Source: Obrimoposthia wandeli (taxonomy: Eukaryota). Taken from it: a stretch of 64,000 nucleotides of DNA. The position numbers and the translations under genes were made by a program. Under the pieces are notes generated by a model that saw nothing but the letters and a program-made list of their open reading frames with translations, did not search any database and was not told the DNA's origin. Positions 1,975 to 22,149 of this stretch are shown here, in pieces. Every line of letters begins with the position of its first letter. The stretch's first letter is position 1. The stretch lies in contig CDROCS010000453.1 in the NCBI GenBank assembly GCA_977020255.1, forward strand, positions 1 to 64,000. The letters run 5' to 3'.

Positions 1975-2069
1975 AATAATCAATTTCCGTTAGGTTTTCA
2001 GGCAATAATATGTAGTTGTAATAATCAATTTCCGTTAGGTTTTCAGGCAATAATATGTAGTGTAATAAT
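1975..2069. repeat. Tandem duplication, 45-bp unit x2
   Basis: AATAATCAATTTCCGTTAGGTTTTCAGGCAATAATATGTAGT(T)GT repeated head to tail, with one indel. Confidence 0.95.
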
Positions 2070-2154: not shown

Positions 2155-2864
2155 TGTAGACAGATTCAACTATCCTGATCTGTTCAGAGATACAGCGAAG
2201 GGGAAAATCGAATGGCACAGTGCGGTAGACAGTTGAGGAAAAACGATTTCAGCAGTCAGACAGAGAAATCAACATGATTTGATAATAATAACTTTCTGTT
2301 TCTGGCTTTTTATTATTATTTGTAGTTTTGTCGTATATATATTCATTTAGTAGTGTGCAGCTTAAATATCTATCTGCTGCACATACTGGATAGATCTGGG
2401 CAGAGAGGAGAAGAACCGGATATTTCGGCTCTGCACACACTCACATGTGCAACCGGGGAAAATCCACCGCCCGTCGAACTCTGGCCAGGCGGTAAAAGTT
2501 TAATTTAAACACACACCCACCTGTGCACAATGGATAAGTAAGTGAGTGAGTAGGGAGAGTGAGTGAACAAGGGATTGAGTGAGCGATTGAGTGAGAAAAG
2601 GAGAGTGAGGAGTGAGTTGAGTGATGTCTGCTGTGTGAGTGTGTGTGTTGAAATGTGTACTTGCGCACACCAACAACATATGTCGACGATATTCGTCGGC
2701 ACATGAAAGGGGAATCTTTTCCCTGCTTTTTATTATTGTTGCCCTGGCTTCGCGGAATCCACCGCGAAGTTAGAGATAACAAGCCATCTCCCTGATGAGT
2801 ACCGGCAGGGCGAAACGGGCTTTTTCCCGTCGGAGATTGAATAGACAAAATGCCAAAGTGCACA
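2155..2864 (-). repeat. Putative 3' LTR (~710 bp)
   Basis: A GC-richer block bounded by TGT...ACA, lying downstream (on the minus strand) of the element's last ORF and a purine-rich tract (~2925-2975). It contains AATAAA-like signals on the minus strand, a CACT/GAGT microsatellite-like tract and several hairpins. It is unpaired, so LTR status is an inference. Confidence 0.5.
2786..2837 (+). ncRNA. Hammerhead ribozyme, type I topology
   Basis: ATCTCC [stem I] CTGATGA [core, 2792-2798] GTACC-GGCA-GG-GC [stem II] GAAA CGGG-CTTTTT-CCCG [stem III] TC [cleavage after C2831] GGAGAT [stem I']. All conserved core nucleotides are present. Confidence 0.88.
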
Positions 2865-3156
2865 TTTTAAAATCGGAACTTTTCCCTAATTAAGGAAAGT
2901 TCCCAATTAATTTTCAATTAATTAATTCCTTTTTACCTTTTCTTTTTTTAAAAATTTTTTCTTTTTCTTTTTATTTTTTAAACAAATAGCTAATATATTT
3001 TTCCAACAATCCTCCGGGTCATAAAAGTCTCTGTCCTCAGAATCATAATTTTTATCTTAATTATTAGTTAAACTATTTTGTCTTGTTTCTATTGTTACCT
3101 AGTGTTGTTTGTATGTTATAACTGATCAATGTTTTATTAATCACAATCATGTCTGG

Positions 3157-4197
3157 TTAAATATCGTTAAAATTTAGACAAGAATGAAAACAGAAATAAA
3201 ATAATAACAATACTACATAATCCAACAAAATCGGGGAGTTTTGTGTACCGGACTCCGAGTTTCCGGTCTTATGCGAGAACGATGAACTGGGGTTGTTCTC
3301 GCTAGATGGTGGATTCATCACCTCGGTCAAATCAAACTCTCTATTCAACATTTCCTCCTTCATTATGAAAATTTTTCGGGTGTGATTTGCATCTTCCATG
3401 CTAGTGTGGACTCCTTTTTGTGTTTCTATATTTAAGGTATTTCCGCACCATGTTGGCGAGTCCAATATTTGGGTGATTGTGATTTAGTTCTGATTTTATG
3501 CTTTTGGATATTCCTAAATCAACAATGTTGAATAGCATCCATTTCTGTAGGCGTAAAGCTTTTAAATCGTTTGTTAGTCCCACACCTACGATGATGTTAC
3601 CATACACAATGTTTTTTACTTCCTCAATTACTTCATCAGCATCTCTACATCCTTGTAACTTTCTATCTGACAGTCCAGTTATTCTAGTAACGTAATTTCT
3701 TACTCTGTTTCTAGATTACGCACAGTGTATCTATAATTACGTTACCTATGTAATATTATAATAGAAACACTTGCTAAAACTGGCTGTTTATCTACTGATA
3801 TCACCATTTCGCAATCGAGGAATAAAATTGCTGGTTTCTGTGCGTTTTTTTTCAAAAAGACTATTTGTTGAGGTTCTTCTGCTTTTCTTATTTTTTCTAT
3901 AAATAATAGATTTGGTCTCTTCCTATTTTTATGCTATATTGATTTTCTAATTGAGCTGCTTGTAAGGTGTAGGTGTGATTTCCTATCATCAGAAAGTTTA
4001 ATGTCTTATCTGATTTGGTTTTTAAATGCTACTCCTAGTGCCACGTGAATATCTATTTTTTCACAATTAATGTTGGGGAATATTCATACTGAGAGCCATA
4101 TGGGTTGGTCTTTTTCATTGGAAAAAATAAGTGCGCTAGTTCTTTCTTCTGTGGTAATTTTTAACTTATTAGGAAGAAATGTTTGATTTGAAAACAT
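3157..4197 (-). pseudogene. DEDDh 3'-5' exonuclease (REXO4/ISG20/REX family) with a ~120-aa N-terminal extension, frameshifted
   Basis: ExoI ILFLDCEMV (D 3814-3816, E 3808-3810). The middle reads VRNYVTRITGLSDRKLQGCRDADEVIEEVKNIVYGNIIVGVGLTNDLKAL (ExoII D ~3566-3568). ExoIII HTSMEDANHTRKIF lies at ~3370-3408. This parallels the REXO4 pattern ALDCEMV / DYRTxVSGI / GHxLxNDLKVL / HxSxQDA. ATG at 4197. Confidence 0.85.
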
Positions 4198-4556
4198 TTT
4201 CTTCCTCCGTTGTTTCTAAAGTATGCAATGCTAAACTGACGCATCTTTTGATACAGAGAATTTTGCTAATAACCACCTTTCTGGCATATTTTCCGTTTTT
4301 CCTCTTTCTATTTTTGCTGTGCTTTTTGTTTGATCTGACCGAGTGAGCTGGTCTGGAGTCGTATCAGGTGATTGCGATTATCCATTCTGCTTTAATCAAT
4401 TTTAAAGTAGTTGAATAAAATAATATAATTATTTCACAGTCTTAAAGTTATAAAAATATCAGTCTTATCCATGCAGTATGTGGGATTTGTCATGAAAATA
4501 AACTTATTAACAAAAGTTAGACAATTTGTACAAAAAGAAGGATGTATGATTATAGT

Positions 4557-4952
4557 TTAACCAGAATTTTGTTCACCAATGTTCATATCCGAGTCATATC
4601 CATCATCAAGTGTTGTATTAGTTGGGATAGTAGGATTAATGGTCAAATAAAAGTGTATCATGTCGCTATAGGTCATCATTTGTCTTCTTAATGAGGCTAT
4701 AGTTGATCGTTGACTTAAAGTTTGTTGTATTAAATAGTCTATTCTGCCAAAACTATGTGTCAATCTCCCTTCTAGTTCGTCAATTGTTAAATCATTATTC
4801 AATTTTTCTTCCACACTTTGTTTTATTAACTGTTTCAGTGATTCATTTTGAGTTGTGATCTTTATATAGTAGTCGTCATGCTGTCTGGAAACATCTCGAA
4901 TCTTTTTCTCTAATTTTTTGCATTTTTTACAAGCTTTTGCCAATCTGTTCAT
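4557..4952 (-). CDS. 131-aa coiled-coil accessory ORF of the retroelement, unknown function
   Basis: Uninterrupted ATG-to-stop ORF with heptad-like Leu/Ile spacing (LEKKIRDVSRQHDDYYIKITTQNESLKQLIKQSVEEKL...IDELEGRL). It shares the strand and composition of the flanking element ORFs. Confidence 0.6.
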   Translation of the reverse strand: MNRLAKACKKCKKLEKKIRDVSRQHDDYYIKITTQNESLKQLIKQSVEEKLNNDLTIDELEGRLTHSFGRIDYLIQQTLSQRSTIASLRRQMMTYSDMIHFYLTINPTIPTNTTLDDGYDSDMNIGEQNSG

Positions 4953-5304
4953 TTTTATATCTAAAAATAACCATTATTAAATTTCAGGATGCGTTTCCTG
5001 GTGATTTTATTTTAATATTATTTCATTAAATCGTCTTTAAAAATATATATATATCAAATTTTTATTCTATTTCCTAATTAATTTAGATTTACATAATAGT
5101 ACTAACATTTTTTGTTACTTAAACGGTTTTATTTAAAAAAGATTTGATTATTGTGTTATATTTCTTTTTCTATTTTCTATTACAGTATTTATGGATAATT
5201 CTGAAGAATTCTCATCCTTGGGAATAATATAAATAGTAAAAGGGCCTAGGACCCACAAAAGTGTTTTCGTTGTTTTGTTTCTATCATTTTTGTATGTTTC
5301 AAAA

Positions 5305-6420
5305 TTAACATTTTCCATGATATTTAAATGTATAGTGATTTATAAATGTAATCATTTCGATTACTATAACTATTATTATAAGTTCTTTTTTATTTTCATT
5401 CCTTGAATGTTCTTGTTTACTATAGTGCATTTTTAAACTTTCATTAAATGATTTATAGGATATTATTTCTGTTGTTTTTAATTTTAATTTAATTCTTATT
5501 TTTTCCGTAATTTCAACTTGATTTGTAACTCTGTAAATTTTTGATGTAAATGTTGTGGTATGTAGCAATTGTTTTGTGGTTATATCTTTAACATATTTCT
5601 TAATTTTTACTGCTGACCAACGACCACAAAAAATTGTAGGTTGATATAGTTTGGATATCTTATTTCCTAAAATTGTTAATTTTGTTAGATTTTTATAACT
5701 TTCAAACTTTTGACTCCATTGTCAGTACATTATTGGTTTATTAGTGATTACGCATTCTCTATTGTCTATTATTATTTTCTCTGGATATCTAATATTATCT
5801 ATTGTTAAATTTGTTTTATTTTGTGTATTTTCTAATTGTTTTCTGAGTCTTTCCAAAAATTAGCATTGTGTCCTCTATATCTAATTCTAATGAGGGCTTT
5901 ATCTAAGTCATCTATTTTTAGTTGAAATTCCCATTTTATCATTATTTTATGTTTTGATATATATTTTGCTGTTGTTTTTTAATATTGATGCTAGGTATAT
6001 GTGAGTTTCTATAATTCTTTCATAGGTGTTATATTTTTTAATTTCGACTTAATTCTTATTTTATATTGTGTTTCTGTTCTTAAAAATGGTATTGTATATT
6101 TTTGTGATTTTATTCCTGAAATAATTATATTTTATTTTCTATCTGTTTGTGTGATTTGCACATTTCCTGTTTTGTTTGTAAGAAGAGAAATATTTAACTT
6201 TATTGATGTGATTTTAGGTATTATTGTTATTAATCCAAAATTTTTTATGAGATGAGTTGTTGAGTCGTATTTATTTGTTTGTTGCTGTATGATTGATTGA
6301 TTTTCATTTATGTTTGTTGCGTTTGTTTTCAGTAGGTTATATTTTATTATAAAATATATTATCAATAACATCATTATTTTACCAATTTCTTTTATTGATA
6401 TTTTATTGTATTTCTGGTTT
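5305..6420 (-). pseudogene. Second membrane-protein ORF downstream of integrase: signal-like segment, FN3-like ectodomain, C-terminal TM
   Basis: KISIKEIGKIMMLLIIYFIIKYNLLKTNA (basic then hydrophobic). The ectodomain includes SQKYTIPFLRTETQYKIRIKS and IKWEFQLKIDDLDKALIRIRYRGHNANFWK (FN3-like strand patterns) and several N-glycosylation sequons. TM segment ELIIIVIVIEMITFI at ~5335-5385. Several frameshifts and stops. Confidence 0.5.
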
Positions 6421-8660
6421 GATGACTCAAAATAGTTTTATTTTGTTTTTGTGAGTTTTTTATTGTCAACATTTGTAGTACTGTTGTATCTTTAGTTGGT
6501 CTTATGTTATATTTGTGACTTTTTACTGTATTCTCCTCAGGTATTTCTCGACATCTGTTTATATGTGCTCTTATTTCTTTTGATTTTGGTTCATTATCTA
6601 GTTTAGCTGTTATGTTGGTTCCGTTGGTACTAATGACTGTATATGTTCCTTTGTATGACTTTGATAATTTGTGAGACAATCCTACATTAATTTGTGGATT
6701 GTGAATCATCACTTTACTTCCGCTTTTTATATTTGATGGCTTAGTTCTTCTATCCTAATATTCTTTGTAATTTTCTTGTATGTTTTTTACAAATAGTTTA
6801 GCTTTTTCGAATGCTAGTTTTATTCTTTCTCTAATTTCTATTTTATATTCAGGTATTTCTAAATATTGTGTAGTAGGTTGTAGTAATGTTAGGTCAATAG
6901 GCATTTGAGGATCTCTGAGGAACATAAGATAAAAAGGTGTTTCTCCTGTGGATGCATGTACTGATGTTCTATATGCAAAAAGGCATGGAGGTATGTGTAA
7001 ATCCCAATCTGTTTGATTGTTGTTTGTGTATGATGCCATCATATCTTCGAGGGTTCTATTAAATCTTTCTACTAACCCGTCAGTTTGAGAGGTTATATGG
7101 TGTTGTATTGATCTTTTTATGTGAAAAATTTCAGCTATTGACGCTAATACATTATTTATAAATTCAGGACCTTTGTCGGTTAATAATTTTCGGGGTGCAC
7201 CGAAAGTAAAAATAATTTTTTCGACTAAAACCTTCGCGATGGTTTCAGCCTTATGATCATGTGTTGGAAAAGCCTCTGGCCATCTTGTAAAATAATCAGA
7301 AAATACTATTATATATCGATTTCCTCGGGGTGTTTCAGGTAATGGTCCCATTACATCCATGGCAACAGTTTCCATGGGGGCCGATGGATAAGGCATTGGC
7401 TTTAAAGGTACTTTTGTGGTACGTAAAGTATTTTTCCGTTTAAGACATATTTCACATGTTTTACACCAATTTTTCACATCTTCCTTCATGTCAATCCAAT
7501 AGTATTTTAAATTTAATCGTGAATGTGTCTTTTTTGATGATAAATGTCCTCCTAGGGCTCCATTATGATATTGAAGAAGTAATTGACACTGAATTTCTTT
7601 AGGAATAACTAGTGAATATAGATATTTGTCATTTAAATAATATAATATTTCATTACTATACTTGTATCGTGATTCGTGAATTTTTAAATGTTTTCTTAAT
7701 TTTTCATCTGTTGGTACTTCGTTTGTGCTAATGTATTTAGTTATTTGCTGAATTTCATTATCTTTGCTTTGAAGTTTAGTAATTACTTTTTCATCATATT
7801 TAGCTTGAATTATTGTAAAAAGATTTAATTCGATGTCGTTTGCAGTTATTTCGTTTATTTCTTCTCTTATTCGTGATAGACAATCTGCATTAGCGTTAGA
7901 TTTTCCTTTTCTATATTTTATTTCAATATCATATTTTTGTAAAATCAATGCCCATCTCATTAATCTAGATGTTGTATCCTTATGATTTAAAAGCCATTGT
8001 AATGGTCTTTGATCTGTGTAAACATAAACCTTTCGACCTAATAAGTAATGTTTAAAATGTTCCATTGCGAAACAAATAGCTAGGCATTCTCTTTCTATCG
8101 TTGAGTAATTCTTTTCATGTTTTTTAAGACCTCTGCTCGCATATGCTATCACATGATCTTTTTCGTTATTTTCCTGTTGTCCTAAAACTGCTCCTAACGC
8201 ATAACCACTGTCGTCAGTCATAACTAAAAATGAGTTATTAAAATTAGGATATCTAAGTATAGGTTTTTCGATTAATTTTTGTTTTAAATATTCATAAGAT
8301 TCTTGTTGTTCTTTTTCCCATTCAAATTTTTCATCTTTTTTAATAAGTTTATTTAATGGTATTGCTATTTGTGCGAAATTTCTAATAAATCTTCGATAAT
8401 ATCCTGCAAGCCCTAAAAATTCCTGTATATTTTTTACTGTTTTTGGGATTGGAAAATTTTTAATCTTTTCTACATTACTCTCGTCTGGTTGTATTCCTTT
8501 TGCTGATACAGCATGTCCTAAGTAATTTACTTTATCTTTTATCCATTCACATTTCTTTGGTTTTAGTTTTAATCCTGCTACCTGTAATCTTAAGAATACG
8601 TTTTCTAAATCTTTTAAATGTTCTTCAAAATTTTTTGAAAAAATAAGAATGTCGTCGATA
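6392..8660 (-). pseudogene. pol: Pol, 3' part: RT C-terminal half, RNase H, integrase with GPY/F module
   Basis: IDDILIFSKNFEEHL...KLKPKKC...YLGH...FLGLAGYYRRFI (RT). FLVMTDDSGYALGAVL, YSTIERECLAI and YTDQRPL (RH). HHCC zinc finger, VAMDVMGP, LLTDKGPEF and DGLVERFNRTL (IN). After a premature TAG at ~6755, KLSKSYKGTYTV (GPY/F). Confidence 0.95.
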
Positions 8661-8662
8661 TA

Positions 8663-10218
8663 TAATATACGTCAAAATTAATGCACATTTTGTTAAAAAA
8701 AATAAAAATATGATTTTATAATTATAAGTATATTTTAATTTCAAATTTTATCAAGAAATTTTATTATATGTAACTTATTAAAGTTATTAAATAATTATTA
8801 GTAGTTATATAATAATATTTCATTTAATAATTTTAGGTTATTTGTTTCACTATAATCTGAATGACGTCATAAAAAACGCACAATTCAAATTATTAGGTAT
8901 TATTGCATATCTTTATAATTAATCATATTTATTATAGGTCAAATTGAAATTAACCATGTCGAAACAATTGACAAAAGAAGAAACTAATGCTATAATTAAT
9001 TTGGTAAACGAGGGGCGCACGTTTACACATATCGGTTTAATCTTTGGTAGGAGCCATACTACCATTTCAAGATTGGTTCAAAGATTAAATAATCCAAATT
9101 ATATGGATGAAAAGAAGAGAGTCGAAAACAGAAGCTTACAAGGTTTCAAAAGCATGGTAAAGCGAATTACGAATCACGAGCCATTCCTGAGTGCGAATGA
9201 TGTAAGAAGAGCTAATCTGACCGATATCATATCAATTCGATCAATGCAGCGTTACCTCAACAGAATGAAACTTTTTGGGCGCATAGCTAAAAGGATTAAT
9301 CTCCAAACTAAAGCATCGCGAAAGAAACGAATAGACTTTTGTAAAAGTGTCAACAATTGGAATTTAGATACTTGGAAAAATATAAATTTCTGATGAAGGT
9401 ACGATTCGAATTAGAATCTAAAAGAATAATGTATGTTAGGAGACCCATTGGGCTAAGAAATCGTTTAAAATATTGCATAAAATTTCGTTATCAGGAGAAA
9501 AGGCATTATGTTCTGGGGTTGTATTTGTTCTGACGGCAGGAGAATAATTGTACTACTGGATCTGGATTAATAGCATTTCTTAAATTTATTAAATGAACAT
9601 TATTTATATGATTTTGGTAATAATATAATGCTTCAAGATATCAGTCATACATCTCTATACGAGGCAATTCTTTAATAACCACAATATAAGAATAGTTGAA
9701 AATTACCCTCAAGATCTCCAGACATTAATGTGATTGAATGTTTGGAGCATTGTAAAACTCAGTTAGAAAGAGATATCCAAGAAATTTAATTCACTTGAAA
9801 GCAATTGTAAATGAAGAATTCCATAATGTTTCTCTAAATGTAATTGATAAATTATATAAAAGTCTACCATTGAGAATTGCTACAATTTTATCAAATAAAG
9901 GTGAATAAGTATTAATATATATTGATTTTCATTGTTGTATTATGTAAATTTTGTAATATATGTAATTGCATAATTCATTTTTGTTATTTATAAAGTTTTG
10001 TGCGTTTTTTATGACGTCATTCAGATTATAGTGAAACAAATAACCTAAAATTATTAAATGAAATATTATTATATAACTACTAATAATTATTTAATAACTT
10101 TATTAAGTTACATATAATAAAATTTCTTGATAAAATTTGAAAATAAAATATACTTATAATTATAAAATCATATTTTTATTTTTTTTAACAAAATGTGCAT
10201 TAATTTTGGCGTATACTA
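8663..10218 (+). mobile_element. Tc1-family DNA transposon with ~220-bp TIRs and TA target duplication, inserted in the RT
   Basis: Near-perfect inverted repeats at 8663-8882 and 9999-10218, with TA at 8661-8662 and 10219-10220. The frameshifted transposase (8944-~9910) has an HTH region, then F(S)DEG, MFWGCI and SPDINVIE. Removing the element restores GTA ATG GTA TAT ATC GAC GAC (VMVYIDD). Confidence 0.95.
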
Positions 10219-10220
10219 TA

Positions 10221-11490
10221 TACCATTACGTGATCTGCATCCATTAAAATATGGCTCATACATCTCTGAAATGTTGCTGGAGCTCCGGTTAATCCAAATG
10301 GTAAGACATTGAATTCATACAATCCTTCTCCTGTTGAGAAAGCTGTTTTATATTTATCTGACTCCTCAATTTCTATTTGCCAGTATCCACTCTGTAAATC
10401 TAAAGTTGTAAATACTTGTGCATTTTTCAGTTTGTCTAATATTTCATCAATTCTTGGCAGTGGATAAGTATCTTTGTGAGTGACTTCGTTTAGTTTTCTG
10501 TAATCTACGCAAAATCTCAAAGAACCATCTTTCTTTTTTACTAAAACGACAGGTGATGTCCATGCAGAAAAACTTCTTCTAACAATTTCATTTCTAACAT
10601 TCCTTTTATTTGTCTTTGAGCCTCATCTCTGTAGGCATATGGAATTCGGTAGGGTCGTTGTTTTATTGCGGTGTTTGTTGTTAACGGAAGATTATGTTTT
10701 ATCAAATTTGTTCGACCTAAATCGTATTCATTTTTAGCAAATATTACATCATATTTTTCTGTTAAAGTTTTAAGTTTTGATTTTTCATAATCATTTAATT
10801 TAATATCGTTAAAATTTATCGTAGATTTATCTTCTATTTTTTCATTATCTATTAATTCAATATTTTCAATAACACTTATTTTTCCAAGACGTACTCCTTC
10901 CTTGAGATGAATTTCATTAATGTCTGCATTTAGGATTCTGATTGGTATTGTGTTGTTTTTTATTTTACAAATTATATTTGCAAAACGTAGTTCAAGGTTT
11001 CTTGTTGATATTTATAAGGCTCAAATAATACATCTTTTCTGTGATTATGTTAGTTTCTAGTTGTAACATTGTTTCTGTTCTTGGTTGGAGAATGATATCT
11101 CCTTTTATTTCTAACTCGTATTCATCTTTGGCGTTAGATCTGTAAATGTATTTTATTTGATTTTTCAAAATCAAAGTGGAAATTATTTCCTAATCTTCTT
11201 AATGTATCTATTCCTATGATCATTTGGCAAGGACAATTTTTCATTATTCTTGTAGGTAATTTTATGAATTTATATCCTATTTTAAAAAGACAGTCTAATT
11301 TTCTTATTATATCTACGGGTTGACCGTTTGCTGCTGTGACTTGACTATTTTCCTTAAGAAGAAGTAATTTTTTGTTGTGTTTTAAGAAAGATTCGTCTAA
11401 AACTGTTACGCTTGATCCTGTGTCAATTATAAGCTTTAAGTTTATATTCGTTAATTTCTACCTTTACATATGGTCGTTTATCGTTATCTT
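10221..11490 (-). pseudogene. pol: Pol, 5' part: aspartic protease, spacer, RT N-terminal half
   Basis: KRPYVKVEINEYKLKA(fs)IIDTGSSVTVLD (protease, DTG ~11417-11425). Then KQRPYRIPY, SPVVLVKKKDGSLRFCVDYRKLN, YPLPRIDE, LDLQSGYWQI, KTAF and FNVLPFGLTGAPATFQR. Confidence 0.95.
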
Positions 11491-11669
11491 TTGATTTATT
11501 GTATATATTGTTGGTGCAGTTGATTTTTGTATAGTTGTTTTATCTATATATTTTTCTAAATCAGGATATTGTGAAGATTCCGTTTTTTCTGTTTCTTTGG
11601 TACTTGTAATTTTTTGTATATTTGTTTCTCGCATTTCATTTGATAATGTGTTTACTATGTTTTGATGAT

Positions 11670-13544
11670 GATTAAAAATAAGGAATTTTGCCAAAAATGG
11701 GAAACATCCTAAGATTAATTTCCATGTTAATCCTCCAACTTTATAAATATAATATGTTGATAAAATTTGACTTAGAAGAATCTTAAACAAATTAATAGAG
11801 CATATATTCCAACTAATCCAGAAAATGCTTGTCCAAAAATTAAAAATTTACCCCATATTTTTGACATGGTGTTTTTAGTGGCTTTTATAAAATGATTTGG
11901 AGAAAGTAATAAGTCGTAATCGGGACGGCTAATTCCGTCAGGTACTGATCTTTCTATGATTTGTGTTAAAATTCTGGATCTTATTTGTGGAAATAAAATT
12001 TATTTTCTTAACTTATCTATATCTTCCTGTATATAAATTCCTTTTTGTGTTTAATTCGTTATCTGATTGTATATTGATGTCGTTGCTGAGAGTGGTTAAT
12101 TGTAATTTTTGTGGTTCTGCGACAATATCTCTTCTTGGAAGTGAAATCCAAATATCTTTTGAAATTTGATAATGAAGTGCCATTATGTTTGAGCAGTTTA
12201 TTTCTTTTATGCTAAAAGTGTTAAAAAGTATAAATTTAGTGATTGGTTCTACAAATAATGAATTATTTTTGTAAGAAATTGGTAATTCTTTTGTACATTT
12301 TTGATGATTTCTTATGTTAACTATTACTTTTTTACATTGATAAGTGTATAACACTTCTCCCATTACTCTTCCAAAAGTACCGTCAGCTAATGGTAATAAT
12401 GGTGTTATTAATTCTGGGTTAGTTGCAATAATTGCCAATTTCGTTTTTAATATTTCCTGATTTAATTTACAATCATTCATTATAGTTTCTCTATATATTG
12501 CTTCTATTGTCATTAGTCCTTTGTGATAAAAATAATCTAATTTATTGTTAAAATAATCATAATTTTTAATATCAAATTTAGTTGGTGTCGTTTTTGCATT
12601 ATGTATTTTTTCATTACTTAAATATATTCCTTTATATTTAGTTGTATAAAGAGAGTGTCCACATCGGGATTCCTCTTTCTTTTTAATAAATCGCATTCCT
12701 GAACCTTGTTCAATAGACATTAATATAGTTGGAGTTGGTGTTTTACGTATTTTTCTAGTTCTATATATTTTGTGTATGTCCTTTGGAATTTGTTGATCTA
12801 GTTCCGGATCATCTCTAAATCTTTTTCCTTGAATTATTTGAAAAGTTTCTGATTTTAAATGTATTAATTTACATTGATCGATTTTTACTTTGTAGTAAAG
12901 TATTGAAGAACCCGTGTTACAGTGACCTATGTTTGCTTCACAAAATGGCATTGTTACCATTGTGTTTGTAGAAGGGTCGAATGTTGCTTTGAAAGTTCTT
13001 AGTTCGACTTCAAAATTTTTAATAACTACTAAACCACTTTGCTTAACTCCCATTACTACATAAGTTCCTGTTGTACATTCTCCATCAGATTTAATCGTAC
13101 CTACAACTGATATCATTTGTTGAATTATTTTATTTTTCGCCGCTCGGACTTTAATTTCTCTATCTATTCTCCTGTTGCGAAAGCATCTTTACTATTAAAA
13201 GCGTCAACTATTATTGGTGTTTTTCCTAATGCTGGTTTTACTATTGAATTGTGACTATGTTGTCCACAATATGTTATAAATGTCTCTACATGTACTCTAC
13301 ATTCGAAAACTTCTGCATATATGAAATCTGTTTCCTGATATACTTGATATAACTTAGTATTTTGGATTTTTACCTCATTTGGGTCAGCGTCTGCACATTG
13401 CTGTAAATCCATTAAAGAATATTTATTTTGGATTTTATATTTTGAACAATCATATGCTTCTAAAGCATTAATTGGTTTTATCATGTTCATAATTAGACAT
13501 ATTATTAATATTATCTGAATAATTTTCCATAATTTTTTCATCAT
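11670..13544 (-). pseudogene. env: Envelope glycoprotein, chuvirus-G / herpesvirus gB-like class III fusion protein type, located between gag and protease
   Basis: Signal-like MMKKLWKIIQIILIICLIMNMIKPINA, then AYDC...SLMDLQQC, FECRVHVETFITYCGQHSH, VGTIKSDGEC, C..NIGHC, CKL....LKTKLAI..TNP, GEVLYTYQCKKVIV..R...CTKELPISY....FVEPIT and C......YQI...W. The membrane region is WGKFLIFGQAFSGLVGIYALL. The cysteine spacing matches my recollection of chuvirus-type G proteins. Frameshifts at ~13164, ~12013 and ~11790. Confidence 0.8.
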
Positions 13545-15350
13545 TTTATTAAGATTATTTGTATGGTTAAAAATTTTAGTTTTTTGATTTTCTATTGTTT
13601 TACGATTTTTCTTGTGTTTTACTTTCTTTTCTTGTGTTTGAGTAGTTTGGTTTGTTTTTGTGATTGTATATTTATTTTTTTGTAATGTCAAACAACCATC
13701 TCTAAACATGTCTCCAAATTCGGATTGTAAGTTTGTTCTATCTGTTTGTGGTTCACTGTTATGGCATTGTTGGTGTATTTCTCTGTAACGATTATCCATT
13801 TCTTTAAGTCGTAATTTTAACAATGCTAATTCGTCTGTGTTTGGAGTTGTTTCTGTATTTTCTATAGTGTGAATAGGGTTTCTTGGGGTATATTGTTGAT
13901 CTTGAGTACTGAATTGTACTGTTTTTTGAACTTGTGGTTGCTGTTTTATTATTGTGTTTCCAAATTGATTCATCATTGTGTTTAATTTTCCACAGTCATC
14001 GGTGTTGTGATTTTTCATATTACAAATCTTACAAAATTTTGTATCATTATTAAAATATCTATTTTGATTATTGTCATAATTATTTGGTTTATTGAAGTTA
14101 TTATTCCTTGGTAGTGTATTATTACTCTGTCTATTTATTAATTTTCTACAAGTTTCAATTGTGTGATTGTCTTTTTTGCAAAATCTGCAAAATTTTATGT
14201 TACTTAATTTTCGACAATTTTCTATTGTATGGTTTTGGAGTCCACAATTTGTGCATTTTTGAAAAGATCTTTGTGTAAATTGTGAGTATGCAAAATTTCT
14301 GTTTGTCTGGTTTCTATAAAATTTATTTATTGGCGGTCTAAATTGTTGAGGATTTTGAAAATTATATTGAGTATCTTGGTTAAAATTCCTAGATTGGTTG
14401 TAGTTTCGTGGCATTTCTATTTTTTCAAAAGATAATGCTGAAACTTGGGTTTGCTGTATCATATTCAGTCTTGCTTCTACTAGTTGAGCTTTTCCTATAG
14501 CCTGTTGAAAGTTTTCTACTTCTAGTAATGCAGGGTGATCTCTAATTTTGTTATTTAATCCATGTAAAAATTGATGTAAAAGTAATCGTTCTCTTTGTGC
14601 TTCTTCTATTTCGGGAAAAGATTTTAATGCAAGTCGTCGTAATTCGACTGCGAATATATTTGTGGGTTCCCCTACATGTTGCTCTCGTTGTCTAAATTGA
14701 TTTAAGTAGTTCTGGTCGGACTGTGCTCCTAAAACCATATTTTGGAAATGCTGGACTAAGTGTTCCCATGTGTCTTTTTGCAGATTTATTAGTCCTCTAT
14801 AAATGGTTAGGGCAGTGCCTTTTAGGTATGCTGGAAAAACTTTAAGTTTTTCTAGGTCTGTCCATTCGAATGCTTGAGCAAAAGAATCATATCTATTCAA
14901 GAATTCTGGTAAAGATGATTTATCGCCATTAAATGCGTCTAGTGGTATGTTTAATCTATGATTTGCCATTTGAGGTACTTCGTTTATTTGTTCGTTATTT
15001 ATTTCTATGTTAGGTGGTACTGGTTCTGCCACTGTTTCTGATTTTTCTGACGAGTTGTCTGAGTCAGATGTTTGTGGTAAGGATAAACTTTCTGTATCTG
15101 AATTTGATGTTAGGTTTTGGTTTTCAGAGTCGGTTGAAATTAAGCGATCCGTGTGTTGGTGAACTAACGTAGTTTCAGGGAAAAATTCGTTATTTGTTCT
15201 AAAATTTATCTGGGATTTAGGTCTCTGTGGTAGTGTTTCGCTTGTGTTAGTTCTTACCAATCTAGTCTGAATGCGTCTCCAGTGAAGATTAGCACTACGT
15301 TTAGATTTTGAAATCTTTGTGTATTGTTCACTATTATCCTGCGTACTGGG
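13545..15350 (-). CDS. gag: Gag with three CX2CX4HX4C zinc knuckles, in the same ORF as the env signal peptide
   Basis: Capsid-like region (FNGDKSSLPEFLNRY..FAQAFEWTD..KL..FPAYLKGTA...YAVELRRLA-like FAVELRRLA...QFLHGL). Knuckles CTNCGLQNHTIENC, CRFCKKDNHTIETC and CKICNMKNHNTDDC at ~13990-14255. The frame is open from ~15360 to 13164; the true start codon is not recovered. Confidence 0.9.
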
Positions 15351-16419
15351 TCGAAAATTAATTTATGTGTTTATATATTGTTGTCTAGTTTTGTTGAAAA
15401 CGATTAAATAAATTTTATATTTTAAATAAATGAAATTTTTTTTAAAAACAGTCAGGAATTATTTCTGCTCTGTGATCAAAATACAGCTCGGCGTTATGAT
15501 AATCGATTACCGTGATTTGAACTGCACTTTCAACCAAAGTAATAGAAAAATTTAACGATGAAACTCCAAAAAATCTGAGTTAAAACTTGTTGCGAGTGTG
15601 GGAAGATGCTGATACCGCACCAATCAGCCAAAATTTAAAATATGCCTTGCTCAATGCAGTGTTGAATGAGTTCTTGGCGGAACTTGTTACTCCTCAACGG
15701 CAACAGCAATCATCACATCAGTATCCTCTTTTCCAGATGCAACATGATGCTAAAATATTTGTTTCTAATTCGCTAGTGTTTATTGAACTAATATTTGTCT
15801 TGACTTTTTATGTCAGGTAGGAGAAAAGTAAATGGAACATTTCTTATACATTTGACTTCGTCAAAAGATTAATATTAATAATAAAAAAATTGTCAGAAAT
15901 AAAAAGTAGTAACATCAAGAACCACATAATCAAATAGAGAAACTCCAAATTACAGCGTTTTTCGTAACGTTTTTTATAGATTTTTGTGGGCCATTCAAAC
16001 AACATATAATGGGAAAATAAAATAATTGCTATAATTGATCAATTCAGTTCTGAACACAGTCAAAGTTTAAAACAACAGCAACACAAATTATGAACAATTG
16101 AATTCTTAAATTTGGAGCTCCGAAAAAAAACACATTATGAAGGAAAGAAATAATTCTAATCAGATTTAATGAAAGAGCTAGCAAAGATAATTTAAAATTA
16201 TATTATCATTTTCAAGTCTACATCATCATTCAAGTAATGGATTAGTCGAAAAACAAATTCCGAACAATCAAAGTTTTTTTTTTGAAAATATATTCTAAGG
16301 TGAACTGGCAATGACGGGTTATAAAGGCGTCTGGGCATCTCTGGATTAGAACAATAGAATAAGTATCGATACACGCCCTCCGAAACACGAAATATACGTT
16401 TAATAATAAATATCAATAC

Positions 16420-19400
16420 ATCTGTTAAGGTCCCGAAACGGAGATTTTATCAAATTTAAATTGGCTATATTTATAGTACTGCCCAAGGTAATTTTAGGAA
16501 CCTGGAAAATTAAAATTAAATAAAAAATCTAAATTGAAAAGGGAAAATTATCAAAAAAACAAGAATTAAATAACTGCATGTTGAGAAATGGAGGAGTTAA
16601 TTAACCTCAGGTGATCTCTAACTCTATTATTAATATAGTCACCAGAGGCAATAAAAAGAACGAATTGTAGTAGCCGAGTGACTCAACATTTCTAGTAGGA
16701 CGGTGTTTGAAGGCAGTGTGTCGACAGAAATCTGCAACTTCCAGAATTTAAAGAGCCTAATTGGTCTACAAATTTTATAAAAGAAGAAACGCGATTTGAC
16801 TTCAACACAAATTTATATCGACAGAAGAACATTGTCGTTAAGATCGATGACAAAATTATATCGAGAGATAAAAGAAAATACTATTAATCATCAATCGACA
16901 AGTGACAAGAAGCCCTCATTGACACAAATTTTTATAAAACTACATCAACATAATATTATTTAAACTAAACTAAATTTTAATAACCTGTACTGGTAACAAT
17001 TTTCATATAGTTAAAATCACTGACCAGTAACGGTCACTGCCTTGTCTATGTCCAAAGCCCGTCAGTAGGATTAGGAACAAGCACACATATATAGCTGGAG
17101 TTGTGATGCTGTTTGTATAACAAAATTATTGAAGTGACATTTATAAACAGTTTTAGTATTGTACCAAACAACCCAATCGCTTTATTATAACATTTTTATC
17201 GACCTGTCATTAGTGGAATATCTTATCAAAGCGATTTGCGTTATATACTTTGACCATTTAGAAGATAAGTAGATATATGTTGTGAGGCACATAACCACAG
17301 AAAATAACTCAGTAATCAATAGTGAGCAAAACATAACCGTATAATACCCTATGATATAAATTACCCTTCAGACGTATTGAAACAATGCAGGTAGACCTTC
17401 CACACAAGTCCTATAATTCCTAAGAATTCGCGCATCAGAGGGTTCCCTAAGAAGTGAAACAACTTTGGTTCCAACACACCAAGCATTCTAATAATGAAAA
17501 TATTATATATAAAACTTACAGTTATTTAAAAGTGTTAGGATGAAGAAAAAGAAAAAGAATAAATTGGTTATTTATAGTAGATGAATAACCTTCATACTTA
17601 AGGTTACAAAAGAATAAAATAAAAATTATAAATTATCTACAAACAAAATAAAATTAAACTGTAAAACTACGACCTTGATAGGCCATGAAAATGAGTATAT
17701 AAGTGTAAAAACAATGTAAAAAAGGGCGGGGAAACAAAAGTAAGTTGAAGTCGACGAGAAAAAATGACAACATCTTAGCGAATCAAGACAGTAAAGTAAG
17801 TCAATTGTGAAGATATTCACATAGTTAATCCTGATCAACCTGTCAGGAAGTCACATCGAGCGTATCCGGCTGCTCGTACATAGCTGGGAATTCGAACACC
17901 AGTACGAGTAAATATAAAAAGGTGAACGTAATAATTAATTTACTAGTTAGTAGGTGACAACTGAGCGCTTCGTACCAGGACGAATTGGAATCGGAATTTT
18001 ATAGACAAGGAAGTGACAACTGAGCACTTCATACCAGTGTTGATAATAATAAATATAGTAAAAAACTGTGTGAACTCAACTTCTAATGTTGTCCCACGAA
18101 TTAAATCGACTCCCGGTTGAGAGCGACTGAGCTACAGTTTGAGGCTAAGACATCATCTAGTTAGATGTAGATCTGTATTCCGGTTATCGGAAATAGTAGA
18201 AGTAGAACAGATTTGTCAGGCTTAATTTTACCCAATTTCTTGGTCTAGACTTAGTCAGACTATTTTTGAAGTTAAAATCACATTCGATCTAACCGGCTAA
18301 TTAATACAGACCTACATTATATTGTTAGGATTAGGATTTTTAATATTTTTTGAAAATAATTAGTTATTAATAAAGAAATTAAAACCTTGAAAGTAAGGTT
18401 AAAATAAAATAAAATTGAAATATAATTTAAAATTAAATATAATAAAATCATCAAGTATTTTAGGAACTTGAATATGTCAAGTGTTTAATGCGTTGTATAT
18501 AAGGGAAAGTTTAGGGCTCCAACGGGACAAAAGTAATTAAGCCACCTAAGAGAAGAGAAGAAGAGAAATTAAGAAGAAAATCAACAGTCAACAGAATAAG
18601 AGTAATTAAGAAGAAAATCAACAGAATCTCCAGTAGCACTTACTTAGGTCGTGTTCAGGACAATTCCATTAGTGCCACTTAGCGCCACTACACGTTCTCC
18701 AGAACAACAAGAAAACACTGCGAACCAACTGCCGATAGCCAGACTGAAAGGTGAGTGCACATAAACTAAGTGCAAATTAATTGTTTTATTTAGACCTATA
18801 AAAGAAAAGATACTTACCCCAAAAGCACAGAGTTGCTGAGAAAAGGAGAGCTAATTTTAAAAGAAGAATTACTTACACCAAAGACAGATTGCGGAAAAAT
18901 GAAGATTTTATTATAAATTTGTTGAATTCAAAGATTAAATGAAGATTTGTTCATAAAAAAAGATTGTGAAATCAACAAACGCGCCGAGAAAAAGGTGAGA
19001 TAGATAAACGAGTTCTCTCATTGTAGAATCGATAAAAATAAGGCAAATTAAAGAAGTTATAATTTTACTTTTCAGATAGACGTGCCAAGAAAAAAGGTGA
19101 GAACGAGAAAGATTTTGAATTAAACTAAAATATACTGAAAGAGTTTGAATTTTAAAGTGAGAACGAAAATGATTTTGAATTAAACCGATTTTGAATTAAA
19201 CTAAAAGATACTGAAAGATTTTGAATTTTAAAGCGAGAACTAAAAGATAAATTGCGTTTTATATAAAAGATATTTTGCGTTGATTTAAAGATTTTTGCGT
19301 TTCAATTAAAAGATAATTTGCGTTTTGACTAAAAGAAATTGTAATTTGAAATAAAGAGTATAGAACTCGTAAATTTGTTAGACCGATTAAAATCGATACG

Positions 19401-19940
19401 CTAAGACATCGTCCGTTTTTGTGACGTTTGTTGCAGTAGTTAGGACTAATTGTTGTAATTTTTAGGAACCTAGTTGGAGTGAGATTAAAGAATAAAGTTT
19501 TCCTACAATTAAGAAATGTTTAGTTGAAAAAACCCCTACAACCAGGCAAATACCAACTCTCCATACATTATACCACAATTAGGGAAGTTTTCCAGTACTC
19601 CGTGCACACAACTCTTTACACATCTCCACAACACAGATTGAAAACAAAACCTTCAGATAAGAAATTGAGACAGGTAAGAAGATTTAAATAGGCCACGAAC
19701 AACTGCAAGCCCTTTTGCTATAGAACTCACGTTGGGGGCCTCCATACGACGATCTATCTAGTAGTTTAATATAGAAACCCCAACAATATCACAATAGTTT
19801 TTTATGGATATCACAGTTAATTGTACACTTACATTCCACAATACACCTTCAGAAAGATTCAATTATGTAGGCCTAGTATATCAGAAAGACCTATTGATAT
19901 AGGACTCCCGTTGGGGGCCTCCATACGAGGATTCTAGATA
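16420..19940 (+). repeat. Unclassified repeat-like segment, A-rich on the plus strand, with internal sub-repeats
   Basis: Duplicated motifs: GACAACTGAGC(G/A)CTTC(G/A)TACCAG (~17956 and ~18015), ATTAAGAAGAAAATCAACAG x2 (~18568 and ~18606), GATTTTGAATTAAAC repeats, and a 34-bp duplication at ~19720 and ~19899. No recognisable ORF. Confidence 0.35.
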
Positions 19941-20587
19941 GAAATTTATCCGACTTTTATTTTGTAATTATTTTCCTTATGACGACTTTCTTTCTAACGC
20001 TTTTTCTCTTTAACTACTTTTATGTCTTTTATGTTGGACTTTAGTAAGATGAAGTCTATTGTAATTTAAAAAAGGTTAAAACAAATTCAGGATGGACTCA
20101 TTAATCTATTCGCAGACAAAAATTGGAAAATATTTTCAATTACCTCATTTTTTAAAGAATCTACTGACAAAATACACAAAATTCCAAAGTCCAAAATATC
20201 ACAAAAGACAGTGAATAATAACTAAATGATAAATAACACAAACGAATGTACAAAAATAGCAAATCTCTTCATTTTTTACAAATGAGAAAATGGAAAACAT
20301 CAACACAGTTACATGGAAATTCAATTTCCAACTCTGATGGCCTTAGCCACCCCTCCTTCGGTTAGTCAGGCTCTGATTAGTCAAAGCCTGCTAACCAATC
20401 ATGGTGCCGAAAATGTGTGTCATGAATGGCTGAGCTGCAGCAGATGAAATTTGCAGATTGACCTTGACCGGCAGTGTCTCCATGTCTCTGGAATTGCCTG
20501 ATTCTCGGATCGAGCCGTCGCCCCGGTTGTACTCTTCATCTCCGTCACTCAACCTACGTTAATTCTCTGTGTGACCTTGTCGTCATT

Positions 20588-20939
20588 ATGGAAGCAGAGC
20601 TCAAGTGCCCGCACTGTTCACTTTGGTTTCGGCGCTCATTGCTGTTGCCATGTGGGCACAGTGTCTGTCATCAGTGTGCAATGGAGCTCACCAGTGACTC
20701 GGTTGTCCCAAGCAATCCGGTTACTATGACAACCACAGCCACTGTGGCCATGGCAACCGCGACAGCCACATCCAGTGAGCCGGACTCTGACCACCTCAGC
20801 GAGACCAGTGAAGCAGATTCCGGTGTCGTTGTCAGCAGCCATGGAGGCGCTCCCAACAATAGCTCCCTAGCAACGACTACTGCAGCCCCAACAACTACCC
20901 CACAGTCAGCGTCAGTCGGCTCAGCAGCTTCCACTACAG
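20588..20939 (+). CDS. TRIM9: TRIM9/TRIM67-like E3 ligase, coding exon 1 (RING N-terminal half)
   Basis: MEAELKCPHCSLWFRRSLLLPCGHSVCHQCA...SEADSG, matching TRIM9 LKCPVC..LPCSHNLC..CA..SEADSG. Donor CAG|GTGCGT is phase 1, consistent with exon 2. TRIM9 versus TRIM67 is not resolvable here. Confidence 0.88.
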
Positions 20940-22149
20940 GTGCGTCACCCCAGCAAAAAGGAGAGAACAAAACGTATAGATTCAATCTGTTACTTTAACC
21001 ATTTTTAATTAAAAAAAACTGAATACATGCCAAGTATTCGCGAAATAATGATCTTTTCCATTTTTCTATTTGGTAAATTAACATCGAATTATTAATTCAT
21101 AAATGTGATGATAATACTTAAGCAAAATTAAGTAATAATTGTATGACAATGTGTTTTAATAAATTGAAAAAGTTAACTGGTTTCATATGTTTTGTAAAAT
21201 GCTTTTGGAATTGCTTAACTGGGTTTCTATTGTGCTTCGAATAAAATATCTACGATTTATTGGTTCTACGTTATACTAAATCAATGATACACTTACTTTG
21301 TTTTGTACGTAGAAATACTTTCAATCATTACGGGGTGATTTTAAACTTATTTTAGTATTTAATTATATTTTTAAATTTAAAACTGTATCAAAAGTAAAAT
21401 TTAATTTAAGAATTTATACAGTATTGGTAAATTTAATAAAGACAAACCCTATTGATATATTCGACATCATATCTAACAACATTGTAAAATAGTTTGACTA
21501 ACCCAGGATTAGCCGAAATCTTATCTATCTTGCAAATATCTATTATGCGGGAAAACTTGGTTGAAAATGTAAAAATTTAACAGATCAGCAGCTCATGTCC
21601 AGAGTAATTTATTATTAGAATCCGGATGTTAAAGTCCAGAAATTCCCTACCAATGACTCATAAGAAGTAAGCAGCAAAAGGTAGCACACTAATATGAAGT
21701 ACATTTATTTAATTAATTTAATGCAAATTTATAAATACAGTGTATTTTTTCATAATATTTTTTTTATTCAAAGCGGATCTATTAGTCTGAGACTTATATT
21801 CATTCAGCGTCGATTTAGACATTTAAGGAGAAACACAAGTTCCTTAATATGGCACTGGGTATATCGAGAAAAATGCATTGCTGTATTTATTTACTTTGAG
21901 AAGTAATGAATACAACCAATTTCTACTTATACATTACCCATCTTTACTAATTACTACTGTCATCAGCATTTACAATATATAATTAATATTTAGTTTTTTT
22001 TCAGAAATCGGTAAAATAGCGTATTCGTCATCAAAATTGTTTCCTGAATTTATTTAATGTCAGATATAACTTATTTTTACACAAAACGTTACTTAAAGTA
22101 TAGTTGGACTATTTAAACACTTTAAAATGTTTATGCATTATGTTTGTAG

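What the first reader, a model, noticed from the sequence alone, without database searches (positions are those of the whole stretch)
2155..15360. Virus-like gypsy element with a five-part cargo: internal fusogen, second surface protein, coiled-coil ORF, DEDDh exonuclease and LTR hammerhead
Seen: one strand-consistent minus-strand block running Gag, class III glycoprotein, PR-RT-RH-IN, FN3-like TM protein, coiled-coil ORF, REX-family exonuclease and an LTR-like block with a hammerhead. Established: env-bearing Ty3/gypsy elements normally run gag-pol-env with a single env 3' of integrase. Inference: this is a decayed copy of an infectious, retrovirus-like lineage with separate fusion and attachment proteins plus a putative counter-defence nuclease. 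I know of no described element with this combination, but cannot search. Membership of the 3' ORFs rests on adjacency and composition, because the 5' LTR is missing.
Basis: partly seen in the sequence, partly recalled or inferred. Interest (0 to 1): 0.95.

Follow-up and report, generated by a model that had tools for sequence, protein, structure and literature searches.

The report
Decayed envelope-bearing gypsy element with exonuclease cargo
This is a broken copy of a retrovirus-like gypsy element whose herpes-gB-type fusion protein sits between gag and pol (a known layout) and which, like intact relatives in metagenomes, also carries a membrane-protein module and an ISG20-like exonuclease gene, which I did not find described; the hammerhead lies on the opposite strand and probably belongs to something else.

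Summary
The minus-strand block is real. It holds Gag (three CCHC knuckles) in one frame with a class III glycoprotein (Pfam PF24664; a 42%-identical relative folds like herpesvirus gB). PR-RT-RH-IN follows, then open frames with two hydrophobic stretches, an intact 131-aa coiled-coil-like ORF and a broken DEDDh exonuclease gene. The copy is decayed: at least 11 interruptions, one nested DNA transposon and no paired LTR.

GAG-ENV-POL gypsy elements with gB-type env are already published for nematodes, bryozoans and flatworms, so that part is not new.

The 3' cargo is supported. In four related contigs an ISG20-like exonuclease ORF adjoins the element on the same strand, and it diverges in step with pol. 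Eight relatives carry a membrane-protein module after integrase. One contig shows the same order: membrane protein, coiled coil, exonuclease. I found no paper describing these two modules.

Not supported: the FN3 label (no signal), and the LTR hammerhead. A complete type I hammerhead exists, but on the plus strand, below Rfam's cut-off, absent from relatives, in a block of different composition with no second copy.

Verdict: a new variant of a known kind.

The parts
13557..15260 (-). gag: open, with three CCHC zinc knuckles. It runs in the same frame straight into the glycoprotein signal peptide. The lower bound is approximate.
   Evidence: ORF and translation. tblastn with the gag of relative L001 gives E 4e-15.
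11467..13556 (-). env: gB-type class III fusion glycoprotein (signal peptide, ectodomain, TM anchor). Broken by 3 frame changes.
   Evidence: PF24664 on three pieces. 35% identity to the L002 glycoprotein, E 1e-101. Hydrophobic segments. Break count. The fold of relative P0122 matches herpesvirus gB.
6395..11451 (-). pol, PR-RT-RH-IN, with outer domain bounds PR 10607-11451, RT-RNase H 7715-10592 and IN with its C-terminal domain 6395-7690. Broken by about 5 interruptions (frame changes and same-frame stops) plus 1 nested DNA transposon.
   Evidence: Pfam RVT_1, RT_RNaseH, Integrase_H2C2 and rve. tblastn with L002 pol domains gives 36-59% identity. IN C-terminal part. Break counts.
8944..9393 (+). 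HTH ORF of a Tc1/mariner-like DNA transposon with 225-bp terminal inverted repeats, nested in pol. It is not part of the element.
   Evidence: HTH_38 and HTH_Tnp_Tc3_2. Inverted repeat at 98% identity.
5300..6394 (-). Decayed coding region after integrase with two hydrophobic stretches about 340 codons apart. It sits where relatives have a type-I membrane-protein module. It is not FN3 by any test run here.
   Evidence: No sequence homology. No Pfam hit.
4557..4952 (-). Intact 131-aa ORF with coiled-coil-like composition. It sits where contigs L013 and L014 have coiled-coil ORFs.
   Evidence: Open-frame length beats 2000 shuffles. Positional parallel. The similarity itself is not significant (E 0.29).
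3160..4215 (-). ISG20/REXO-like DEDDh exonuclease gene. Broken by 3 interruptions, and the C-terminal ~300 profile positions of relatives are not found.
   Evidence: Catalytic motifs are visible. Profile of relatives gives E 1e-10 and further collinear pieces. tblastn with the L002 exonuclease ORF gives E 3e-4. Break count.
2926..2979 (-). Purine-rich run. It reads as PPT-like on the minus strand and as a T-run on the plus strand.
   Evidence: Read directly.
2155..2864 (.). Block richer in G+C (0.48 at its core) with TGTGCAC...GTCTACA ends on the minus strand. It is either a candidate 3' LTR or an unrelated repeat. Undecided.
   Evidence: No second copy in the window.
2786..2837 (+). Type I hammerhead motif with a complete core, helix I of 6 bp and helix III of 5 bp. 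It is on the strand opposite to the element.
   Evidence: Rfam RF00163, 27.2 bits, E 3e-4 in 1 kb. A helix-aware scan finds it as the only one in the window and in 19 loci.

Best explanation
Window ~3160-15260 (minus strand) is a dead, LTR-unpaired copy of a Ty3/gypsy (Metaviridae, errantivirus-like) endogenous retrovirus of the GAG-ENV-POL type.

Shown here:
- gag and a gB-type class III fusogen lie in one reading frame and are followed by PR-RT-RH-IN.
- Intact relatives encode gag-env-pol as one or two giant ORFs.
- Those relatives add, after integrase, a signal-peptide/ectodomain/TM-anchor module.
- In one sub-lineage they also add a separate ORF with an ISG20-like DEDDh exonuclease domain.

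Inferred working of the live lineage:
- The polyprotein is threaded through the ER membrane. Gag stays cytosolic, and the internal signal peptide puts the fusogen ectodomain in the lumen.
- The TM anchor brings the chain back, so that PR-RT-RH-IN is cytosolic. The post-integrase module repeats this trick for a second surface protein.
- Signal peptidase and the element's protease then separate the parts.
- The fusogen mediates cell-to-cell or particle entry.
- The second membrane protein is most likely an attachment or assembly partner.
- The exonuclease is a 3'-5' nuclease acting on RNA or on RNA/DNA ends. I consider blunting of host nucleic-acid-based defence and trimming of the element's own replication intermediates about equally likely.

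The copy in the window can do none of this. At least 11 interruptions, a nested DNA transposon, a shortened exonuclease gene and the lack of a 5' LTR see to that. The plus-strand hammerhead in the adjacent block is most likely not part of the element.
For: - Domain calls: 3, 4, 35.
- Class III fold: model of P0122 with pLDDT 81.5. Foldseek matches HSV-1, VZV, PrV and KSHV gB at E about 1e-14, probability 1.00.
- The gene order is a lineage trait. The glycoprotein query finds 720 proteins. Eleven of its 13 best hits are 748-3243 aa, and the nine of them I scanned carry the glycoprotein domain; all but two also have PR or PR-RT-RH-IN downstream, and one has a CCHC knuckle upstream.
- Exonuclease ORF next to the element on the same strand: L002 and L005 (224-232 nt after the pol stop), L018 and L001.
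- Pfam RNase_T scores 41.2 against a cut-off of 24. The family profile hits ISG20L2 (7yw5) at 2e-11 and ISG20 (1wlj) at 3e-6.
- Candidate DEDDh positions (D207, E209, an Exo II Asp, H341, D346) are each kept in 7 or 8 of 8 relatives.
- Co-divergence: RT-IN 82% with exonuclease 60%; RT-IN 59-61% with exonuclease 29-30%; in the window RT-RH 59% with exonuclease 31%.
- Membrane module in 8 relatives.
- The order TM, coiled coil, exonuclease in L013.
- A-rich strand bias runs from about 3200 to 15500, except in the nested insert.
Against: - No LTR pair, PBS or TSD could be shown in the window or in any of 19 loci. Membership of the 3' genes therefore rests on recurrence and co-divergence, not on termini.
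- The window's TM region and coiled-coil ORF have no significant sequence similarity to the relatives' modules.
- L013, the only contig with the same three-part order, shows no integrase within 3.5 kb upstream.
- L003 and L019 lack the exonuclease, so it is not universal.
- Four of the supporting contigs come from one metagenome sample (ERZ25039515).
- The membrane topology and all functions are inferred.
Confidence: 0.8

Rival explanations
1. The 2155-2864 block with the hammerhead is the element's 3' LTR. The ribozyme then lies antisense in U3.
For: - The block follows the last gene and a purine-rich run.
- It starts with TG and ends with CA on the minus strand, with partly inverted ends.
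- Its higher G+C is common for LTRs in AT-rich genomes.
Against: - There is no matching 5' copy upstream of gag.
- About 60 nt separate the purine run from the TG.
- The hammerhead is on the opposite strand.
- No hammerhead is present in the 3' regions of relatives.
- The exonuclease gene looks cut short, which suggests that the original 3' end may be lost.
Confidence: 0.3
2. The hammerhead block is a fragment of an independent hammerhead-bearing repeat on the plus strand, that is an animal retrozyme, a Penelope-related non-autonomous element or a SINE-like element. It merely abuts the truncated gypsy copy.
For: - Most type I hammerheads of animal genomes lie in retrozymes (PMC7229834), which a 2026 preprint ties to Penelope-like elements (10.64898/2026.07.22.740005).
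- The motif is on the plus strand, and a T-rich run follows it on that strand.
- The block's composition and AT skew break with those of the element.
Against: - There is only one ribozyme, no tandem unit and no Penelope RT nearby.
- The block has no other copy in the 64-kb window.
Confidence: 0.45
3. The 3' ORFs (TM region, coiled coil, exonuclease) are host pseudogenes or pieces of other transposons that lie next to the gypsy copy by chance.
For: - There are no termini to bound the element.
- The TM region and the coiled coil lack detectable homologues.
- L013 shows no integrase upstream.
Against: - The exonuclease recurs beside the element in four other loci on the same strand and co-diverges with pol.
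- The same strand bias continues through the region.
- The membrane module sits in frame with integrase in seven relatives.
Confidence: 0.08

Closest known systems
GAG-ENV-POL Ty3/gypsy 'errantiviruses' with HSV/gB-type ENV of Nematoda, Bryozoa and Platyhelminthes (Chary and Hayashi, eLife 2026, PMC13524379; Sacco et al. 2022, J Gen Virol, doi 10.1099/jgv.0.001739, not held and not read)
   Same: Gypsy-type pol, a class III gB-like fusogen placed between gag and pol, and an ectodomain flanked by a signal peptide and a TM anchor.
   Different: The held paper mentions no exonuclease and no accessory or downstream-of-pol genes, and mentions 'transmembrane' only for ENV, not for a second membrane protein after integrase. 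The host phylum of the window is unknown, and I made no RT tree.
Bdelloid rotifer Vesta/Juno LTR retrotransposons with an enzymatic ORF3 (Rodriguez, Kenefick and Arkhipova 2017, PMC5408684)
   Same: An LTR retroelement that carries a 3'-5' exonuclease ORF downstream of pol. The authors raise the same idea of an auxiliary role.
   Different: There the nuclease is RNase D-like DEDDy and stands in place of env. Here it is ISG20/RNase T-like DEDDh and comes in addition to a true fusogen and a second membrane module.
Mosquito BEL/Pao 'Anakin' elements and arthropod gypsy elements with a chuvirus-like glycoprotein (Dezordi et al. 2020, PMC7642597; PMC13524379)
   Same: A glycoprotein of the Monjiviricetes type (PF24664) captured by an LTR retroelement.
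   Different: They belong to a different superfamily (BEL/Pao), and no exonuclease cargo is reported for them.
ISG20 / ISG20L2 / REXO4 host exonucleases; as functional analogues, the DEDDh nucleases of arenavirus NP and coronavirus nsp14 (the analogues are from my own knowledge, not tested here)
   Same: A DEDDh catalytic set. The best solved relatives by sequence are ISG20L2 and ISG20.
   Different: The element's ORF is 440-775 aa, with extra N- and C-terminal regions. Its substrate and role are unknown.
Type I hammerheads of animal retrozymes and Penelope-like elements (PMC7229834; 10.64898/2026.07.22.740005)
   Same: A complete type I core and three helices.
   Different: It is a single copy, not tandem, scores below Rfam's gathering score, and has no Penelope RT nearby.

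Membership tests
Ty3/gypsy (Metaviridae) LTR retroelement | pol domain order PR-RT-RNase H-IN | tested here: met
   Pfam hits and tblastn with relatives, collinear on the minus strand.
Ty3/gypsy (Metaviridae) LTR retroelement | Gag with CCHC nucleocapsid knuckles | tested here: met
   Three CX2CX4HX4C motifs in the ORF. Similarity to the gag of L001.
Ty3/gypsy (Metaviridae) LTR retroelement | Paired long terminal repeats | tested here: not met
   No direct repeat flanks the block. This copy is unpaired or truncated. The loci of relatives were also uninformative.
Ty3/gypsy (Metaviridae) LTR retroelement | tRNA primer-binding site, polypurine tract and target-site duplication | tested here: inconclusive
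   Only a purine-rich run at 2926-2979. The window has no tRNA gene to compare with. A TSD cannot be tested without both ends.
GAG-ENV-POL gB-type errantivirus-like elements | env ORF between gag and pol | tested here: met
   The same order holds in relatives.
GAG-ENV-POL gB-type errantivirus-like elements | ENV has the class III (gB-like) fold | tested here: met
   Tested on relative P0122, 42% identical to the window's piece: Foldseek matches herpesvirus gB at E 1e-14. The window's own gene is broken and was not modelled.
GAG-ENV-POL gB-type errantivirus-like elements | RT/IN groups with the published clades; host in Nematoda, Bryozoa or Platyhelminthes | not tested
   No published element sequences were to hand. 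The host of the window could not be identified.
DEDDh exonuclease (RNase T / ISG20 / REXO) | Exo I DxE, Exo II D and Exo III Hx4D motifs | tested here: met
   All are readable in the remnant. In relatives, candidate positions for each motif are kept in 7 or 8 of 8 sequences.
DEDDh exonuclease (RNase T / ISG20 / REXO) | Family model above its threshold | tested here: inconclusive
   Relatives pass: PF00929 at 41.2 against 24. The window's pieces give only a sub-threshold PF01612 hit, but E 1e-10 to the relatives' profile.
Hammerhead ribozyme type I | Conserved core, three helices and a GUH cleavage site | tested here: met
   Helix II is weak (2+2 bp with a bulge).
Hammerhead ribozyme type I | Rfam gathering score | tested here: not met
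   27.2 bits against 34. Nothing was found in the whole-window runs.
Hammerhead ribozyme type I | Self-cleavage | not testable with these tools
   The thermodynamic fold alone does not favour the ribozyme shape (z -0.39).
Fibronectin type III domain protein | A match to an FN3 model or fold | tested here: not met
   No Pfam hit up to E 1 in the window's frames, nor up to E 1 in P0012, the L019 module and P0278, nor up to E 0.001 in the long polyproteins. No PDB sequence hit for P0278. The fold was not modelled.

The most novel reading that the evidence does not exclude
A sub-lineage of gB-type GAG-ENV-POL metaviruses is genetically 'complex'. Besides gag, env and pol it keeps under selection a second type-I surface protein after integrase, small coiled-coil ORFs, and a multidomain ORF. 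That ORF joins an ISG20-like DEDDh exonuclease to an N-terminal double-stranded beta-helix (AlkB/cupin-like) domain. This would be an accessory nucleic-acid-processing gene set not described for any LTR retroelement, possibly used against host nucleic-acid-based defence.
Probability: 0.35. Interest if true: 0.8.

Novelty: new variant of a known kind. Interest (0 to 1): 0.6.

Why it matters
Invertebrate retrovirus-like elements are usually drawn as gag-pol(-env). This case shows that one branch of the recently described GAG-ENV-POL group repeatedly carries two more gene modules. One is a relative of an interferon-induced antiviral nuclease of vertebrates.

If these modules are under selection, they would be accessory genes of an invertebrate endogenous retrovirus. 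They would offer a new case for two questions: how retroelements pick up host-like nucleases, and how a membrane glycoprotein can be expressed from the middle of a polyprotein.

The copy in this window is itself an inert fossil. Its value is as a pointer to the family.

Tried and rejected
- LTR search by direct repeats and blastn in the window and in loci L001-L005, L018 and L019: nothing.
- Rfam at gathering score and at E<=1 over 17 kb: no hammerhead. It appeared only in a 1-kb search.
- Tandem-unit test of the hammerhead block: no repeat unit.
- Hammerheads in relatives: none.
- FN3 or any other family in the post-integrase frames: none.
- Homology of the window's 4300-6400 region to the C-terminal modules of relatives: pairwise E values of only 0.02-0.05 in a tiny database. 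A joint profile with all 605 window fragments as control gave no enrichment. Rejected as evidence.
- Coiled-coil ORF against the L013 coiled-coil ORF: E 0.29.
- Family search with the L013 membrane protein: only the protein itself.
- PDB sequence search with the glycoprotein piece: nothing. The question was settled by fold instead.
- Exonuclease ORF model: pLDDT 47, useful only for its N-terminal domain.
- PBS search: no tRNA genes in the window.
- JGI metagenome scan: the exonuclease ORFs sit on short contigs that mostly start at the ORF, so they say little about linkage.
- Host identity: not obtained. The nearest pol proteins are only 55% identical.
- I did not scan viral contigs with the glycoprotein, because that could fetch viruses of animals.
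- I built no consensus.


Full report
**1. What is there**

The window is AT-rich (about 30% G+C) eukaryotic DNA with one assembly gap, which I left alone. On the minus strand, from about 15260 down to about 3160, lies a collinear set of retroelement genes.

- One ORF of 698 codons holds a Gag with three CX2CX4HX4C knuckles. In the same frame it continues into a Met-Met start, a signal-peptide-like hydrophobic stretch and the first 115 residues of a glycoprotein.
- The glycoprotein continues in further frames. Pfam PF24664 (Monjiviricetes_fusion) hits three pieces at E 3e-16, 2e-34 and 4e-3.
- PR, RT, RNase H and integrase follow.
- A Tc1/mariner-like DNA transposon on the other strand, with 225-bp terminal inverted repeats 98% alike, is nested in pol.
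- Downstream of the integrase C-terminal domain come decayed open frames, an intact 131-codon ORF and an exonuclease remnant.
- A-richness of the coding strand runs from about 3200 to 15500, except in the nested insert. It stops at both sides.

**2. State of the copy**

These are counts only.

- The glycoprotein gene has 3 frame changes.
- From the glycoprotein to integrase there are 8 interruptions in all (6 frame changes and 2 same-frame), plus one nested transposon.
- The exonuclease gene has 3 interruptions and lacks the C-terminal ~300 positions of the relatives' profile.
- gag and the 131-codon ORF are open.
- No direct repeat pairs the ends.

**3. The fusogen and the gene order**

- A search of 1.84 billion representative proteins with the 367-residue glycoprotein piece found 720 relatives. 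Eleven of the 13 best are 748 to 3243 residues long.
- In the nine of these that I scanned, the glycoprotein domain is present. In seven it is followed by PR or by PR-RT-RH-IN, and in one it is preceded by a CCHC knuckle.
- Contigs show gag-env-pol as one ORF (L004), as two ORFs (L018), or as gag plus env-pol (L005, L001).
- The standalone relative P0122 is 42% identical to the window's piece. It was modelled with 57 aligned sequences (pLDDT 81.5). It matches post-fusion herpesvirus gB at Foldseek E about 1e-14, probability 1.00.

The 'class III glycoprotein between gag and pol' is therefore real and is a lineage trait. It is not new. Chary and Hayashi (eLife 2026, PMC13524379) describe Ty3/gypsy elements of Nematoda, Bryozoa and Platyhelminthes with HSV/gB-type ENV arranged GAG-ENV-POL. 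They credit Sacco et al. 2022 for the nematode case. I could not read the latter paper.

**4. The exonuclease**

- The remnant shows the DxE, D and Hx4D motifs.
- In L002 and L005 an ORF of 684-691 residues with Pfam RNase_T (41.2 bits against a cut-off of 24) starts 224-232 nt after the pol stop.
- In L018 a 442-residue homologue follows pol (profile E 2.5e-61).
- In L001 a 775-residue homologue lies on the same strand upstream of gag. This is what a copy-LTR-copy junction would give.
- A profile of eight family members hits ISG20L2 (7yw5, 2e-11) and ISG20 (1wlj, 3e-6) among solved structures.
- The same profile hits the window at E 1e-10, with further collinear pieces over profile positions 49-355.
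- Candidate positions for the five DEDDh residues are each kept in 7 or 8 of 8 relatives.
- The nuclease diverges in step with pol, only faster. RT-IN at 82% goes with exonuclease at 60%. RT-IN at 59-61% goes with 29-30%. In the window, 59% goes with 31%.

This is the behaviour of an element gene, not of a chance neighbour. L003 and L019 lack it, so it marks a sub-lineage. An exonuclease ORF3 in LTR elements has a precedent, but of the DEDDy type and in place of env (rotifer Vesta/Juno, PMC5408684). I found no paper on a DEDDh or ISG20-like nuclease in LTR elements.

**5. The 'second surface protein'**

- Seven relatives (L002, L003, L004, L005, L018, L019, P0012) have two hydrophobic segments 218-313 residues apart, in frame after the integrase C-terminal domain. 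A short tail follows. The stretch between the segments carries N-glycosylation sequons and cysteines.
- In L013 such a protein, with segments 381 residues apart, is a separate 504-residue ORF.
- P0012, the nearest integrase relative (56%), reads as signal peptide, ectodomain of about 305 residues, TM anchor and basic tail.
- The window has two hydrophobic stretches about 340 codons apart at the same place.
- It also has two open frames of 138 codons that no shuffle out of 2000 reaches.
- Sequence similarity to the relatives' modules is not demonstrable.
- No FN3 signal exists anywhere.

The module is conserved in place and topology. Its fold is unknown.

**6. The coiled-coil ORF**

- It is intact and gives only weak coiled-coil-type Pfam hits.
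- L013 and L014 have one or two coiled-coil ORFs exactly between the membrane protein and the exonuclease ORF.
- The order therefore matches the window. The pairwise similarity is not significant (E 0.29).
- L013 shows no integrase in its 3.5 kb upstream.

**7. The hammerhead and the 'LTR'**

- Rfam finds Hammerhead_1 only when 1 kb is searched: 27.2 bits (gathering score 34), E 3e-4, on the PLUS strand at 2786-2837.
- The core, a 6-bp helix I, a 5-bp helix III and a GUC site are all present. Helix II is weak.
- The motif is single, not part of a tandem unit, and absent from 19 related loci.
- The surrounding block (2155-2864) has up to 48% G+C and no A-rich bias. On the minus strand it has TG...CA ends about 60 nt after a purine run. 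It has no second copy.
- Most animal type I hammerheads belong to retrozymes related to Penelope-like elements (PMC7229834; 10.64898/2026.07.22.740005).

I rate an independent repeat at 0.45 and an LTR with an antisense ribozyme at 0.3.

**8. How it most likely works**

This section is inference. The in-frame layout fits a polyprotein threaded through the ER membrane: cytosolic Gag, signal peptide, luminal fusogen, TM anchor, cytosolic enzymes, signal-like segment, luminal ectodomain, TM anchor. Gag and the enzymes would stay cytosolic while both ectodomains are luminal. Signal peptidase and the element's protease would free the parts. The nuclease would act on RNA or on RNA/DNA 3' ends. Counter-defence and processing of replication intermediates are both open.

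**9. Limits and conduct**

- The host was not identified. I made no RT tree.
- Four key contigs come from one sample.
I did not scan viral contigs with the glycoprotein, and I left the N run alone.
- Possible slip, declared and not deleted: notebook entry 1 records the bounds of the nested transposon. After noticing this I printed only counts and outer bounds.

Noticed in passing
window 8944-9393 (+), inside pol: A Tc1/mariner-like DNA transposon (HTH_38 and Tc3-type HTH) with 225-bp terminal inverted repeats 98% identical. It is younger than the decay of the gypsy copy.
   Followed up: partly
window 20474-23656 (+): Exon-like ORFs of a host gene with RING and B-box motifs (TRIM-like), at 39% G+C against about 29% around them. 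This is the only evident host gene near the element.
   Followed up: no
window 1975-2069: A perfect 45-bp tandem duplication just beyond the hammerhead block.
   Followed up: no
window 16000-20000: The strand bias flips to A-rich on the plus strand right after the element. Short tandem repeats lie at 19094-19340. No ORF or family hit was found.
   Followed up: no
L002 9547-11622 (P0271), residues 30-157: The N-terminal domain of the exonuclease ORF is modelled confidently as a double-stranded beta-helix. Its top fold matches are Ofd2, ALKBH2, AlkB and cupins. H93, D96, H102 and R145 are invariant in 7 of 7 sequences. There is no Pfam support, and the usual HxD...H spacing is not evident.
   Followed up: partly
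L001 12777-14612: In this relative an ankyrin-repeat ORF of 611 aa follows env-PR where RT is expected. This may be a rearranged copy or a chimeric assembly.
   Followed up: no
P0122 residues 9-70: The standalone glycoprotein relative has an N-terminal helical extension with a sub-threshold Bcl-2 family hit (E 1e-3, 20 bits against 31). The model confidence there is low.
   Followed up: no
L018 216-853 and L002 50-669: Tandem repeats sit just upstream of gag or env in two relatives, where a 5' LTR or leader would be. No LTR pair was found in any contig.
   Followed up: partly
L019 11066-12367 (-): A Peptidase_C48 (Ulp/SENP-like) ORF lies on the opposite strand directly after the element's last ORF. 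I cannot tell whether it is a neighbour or cargo.
   Followed up: no
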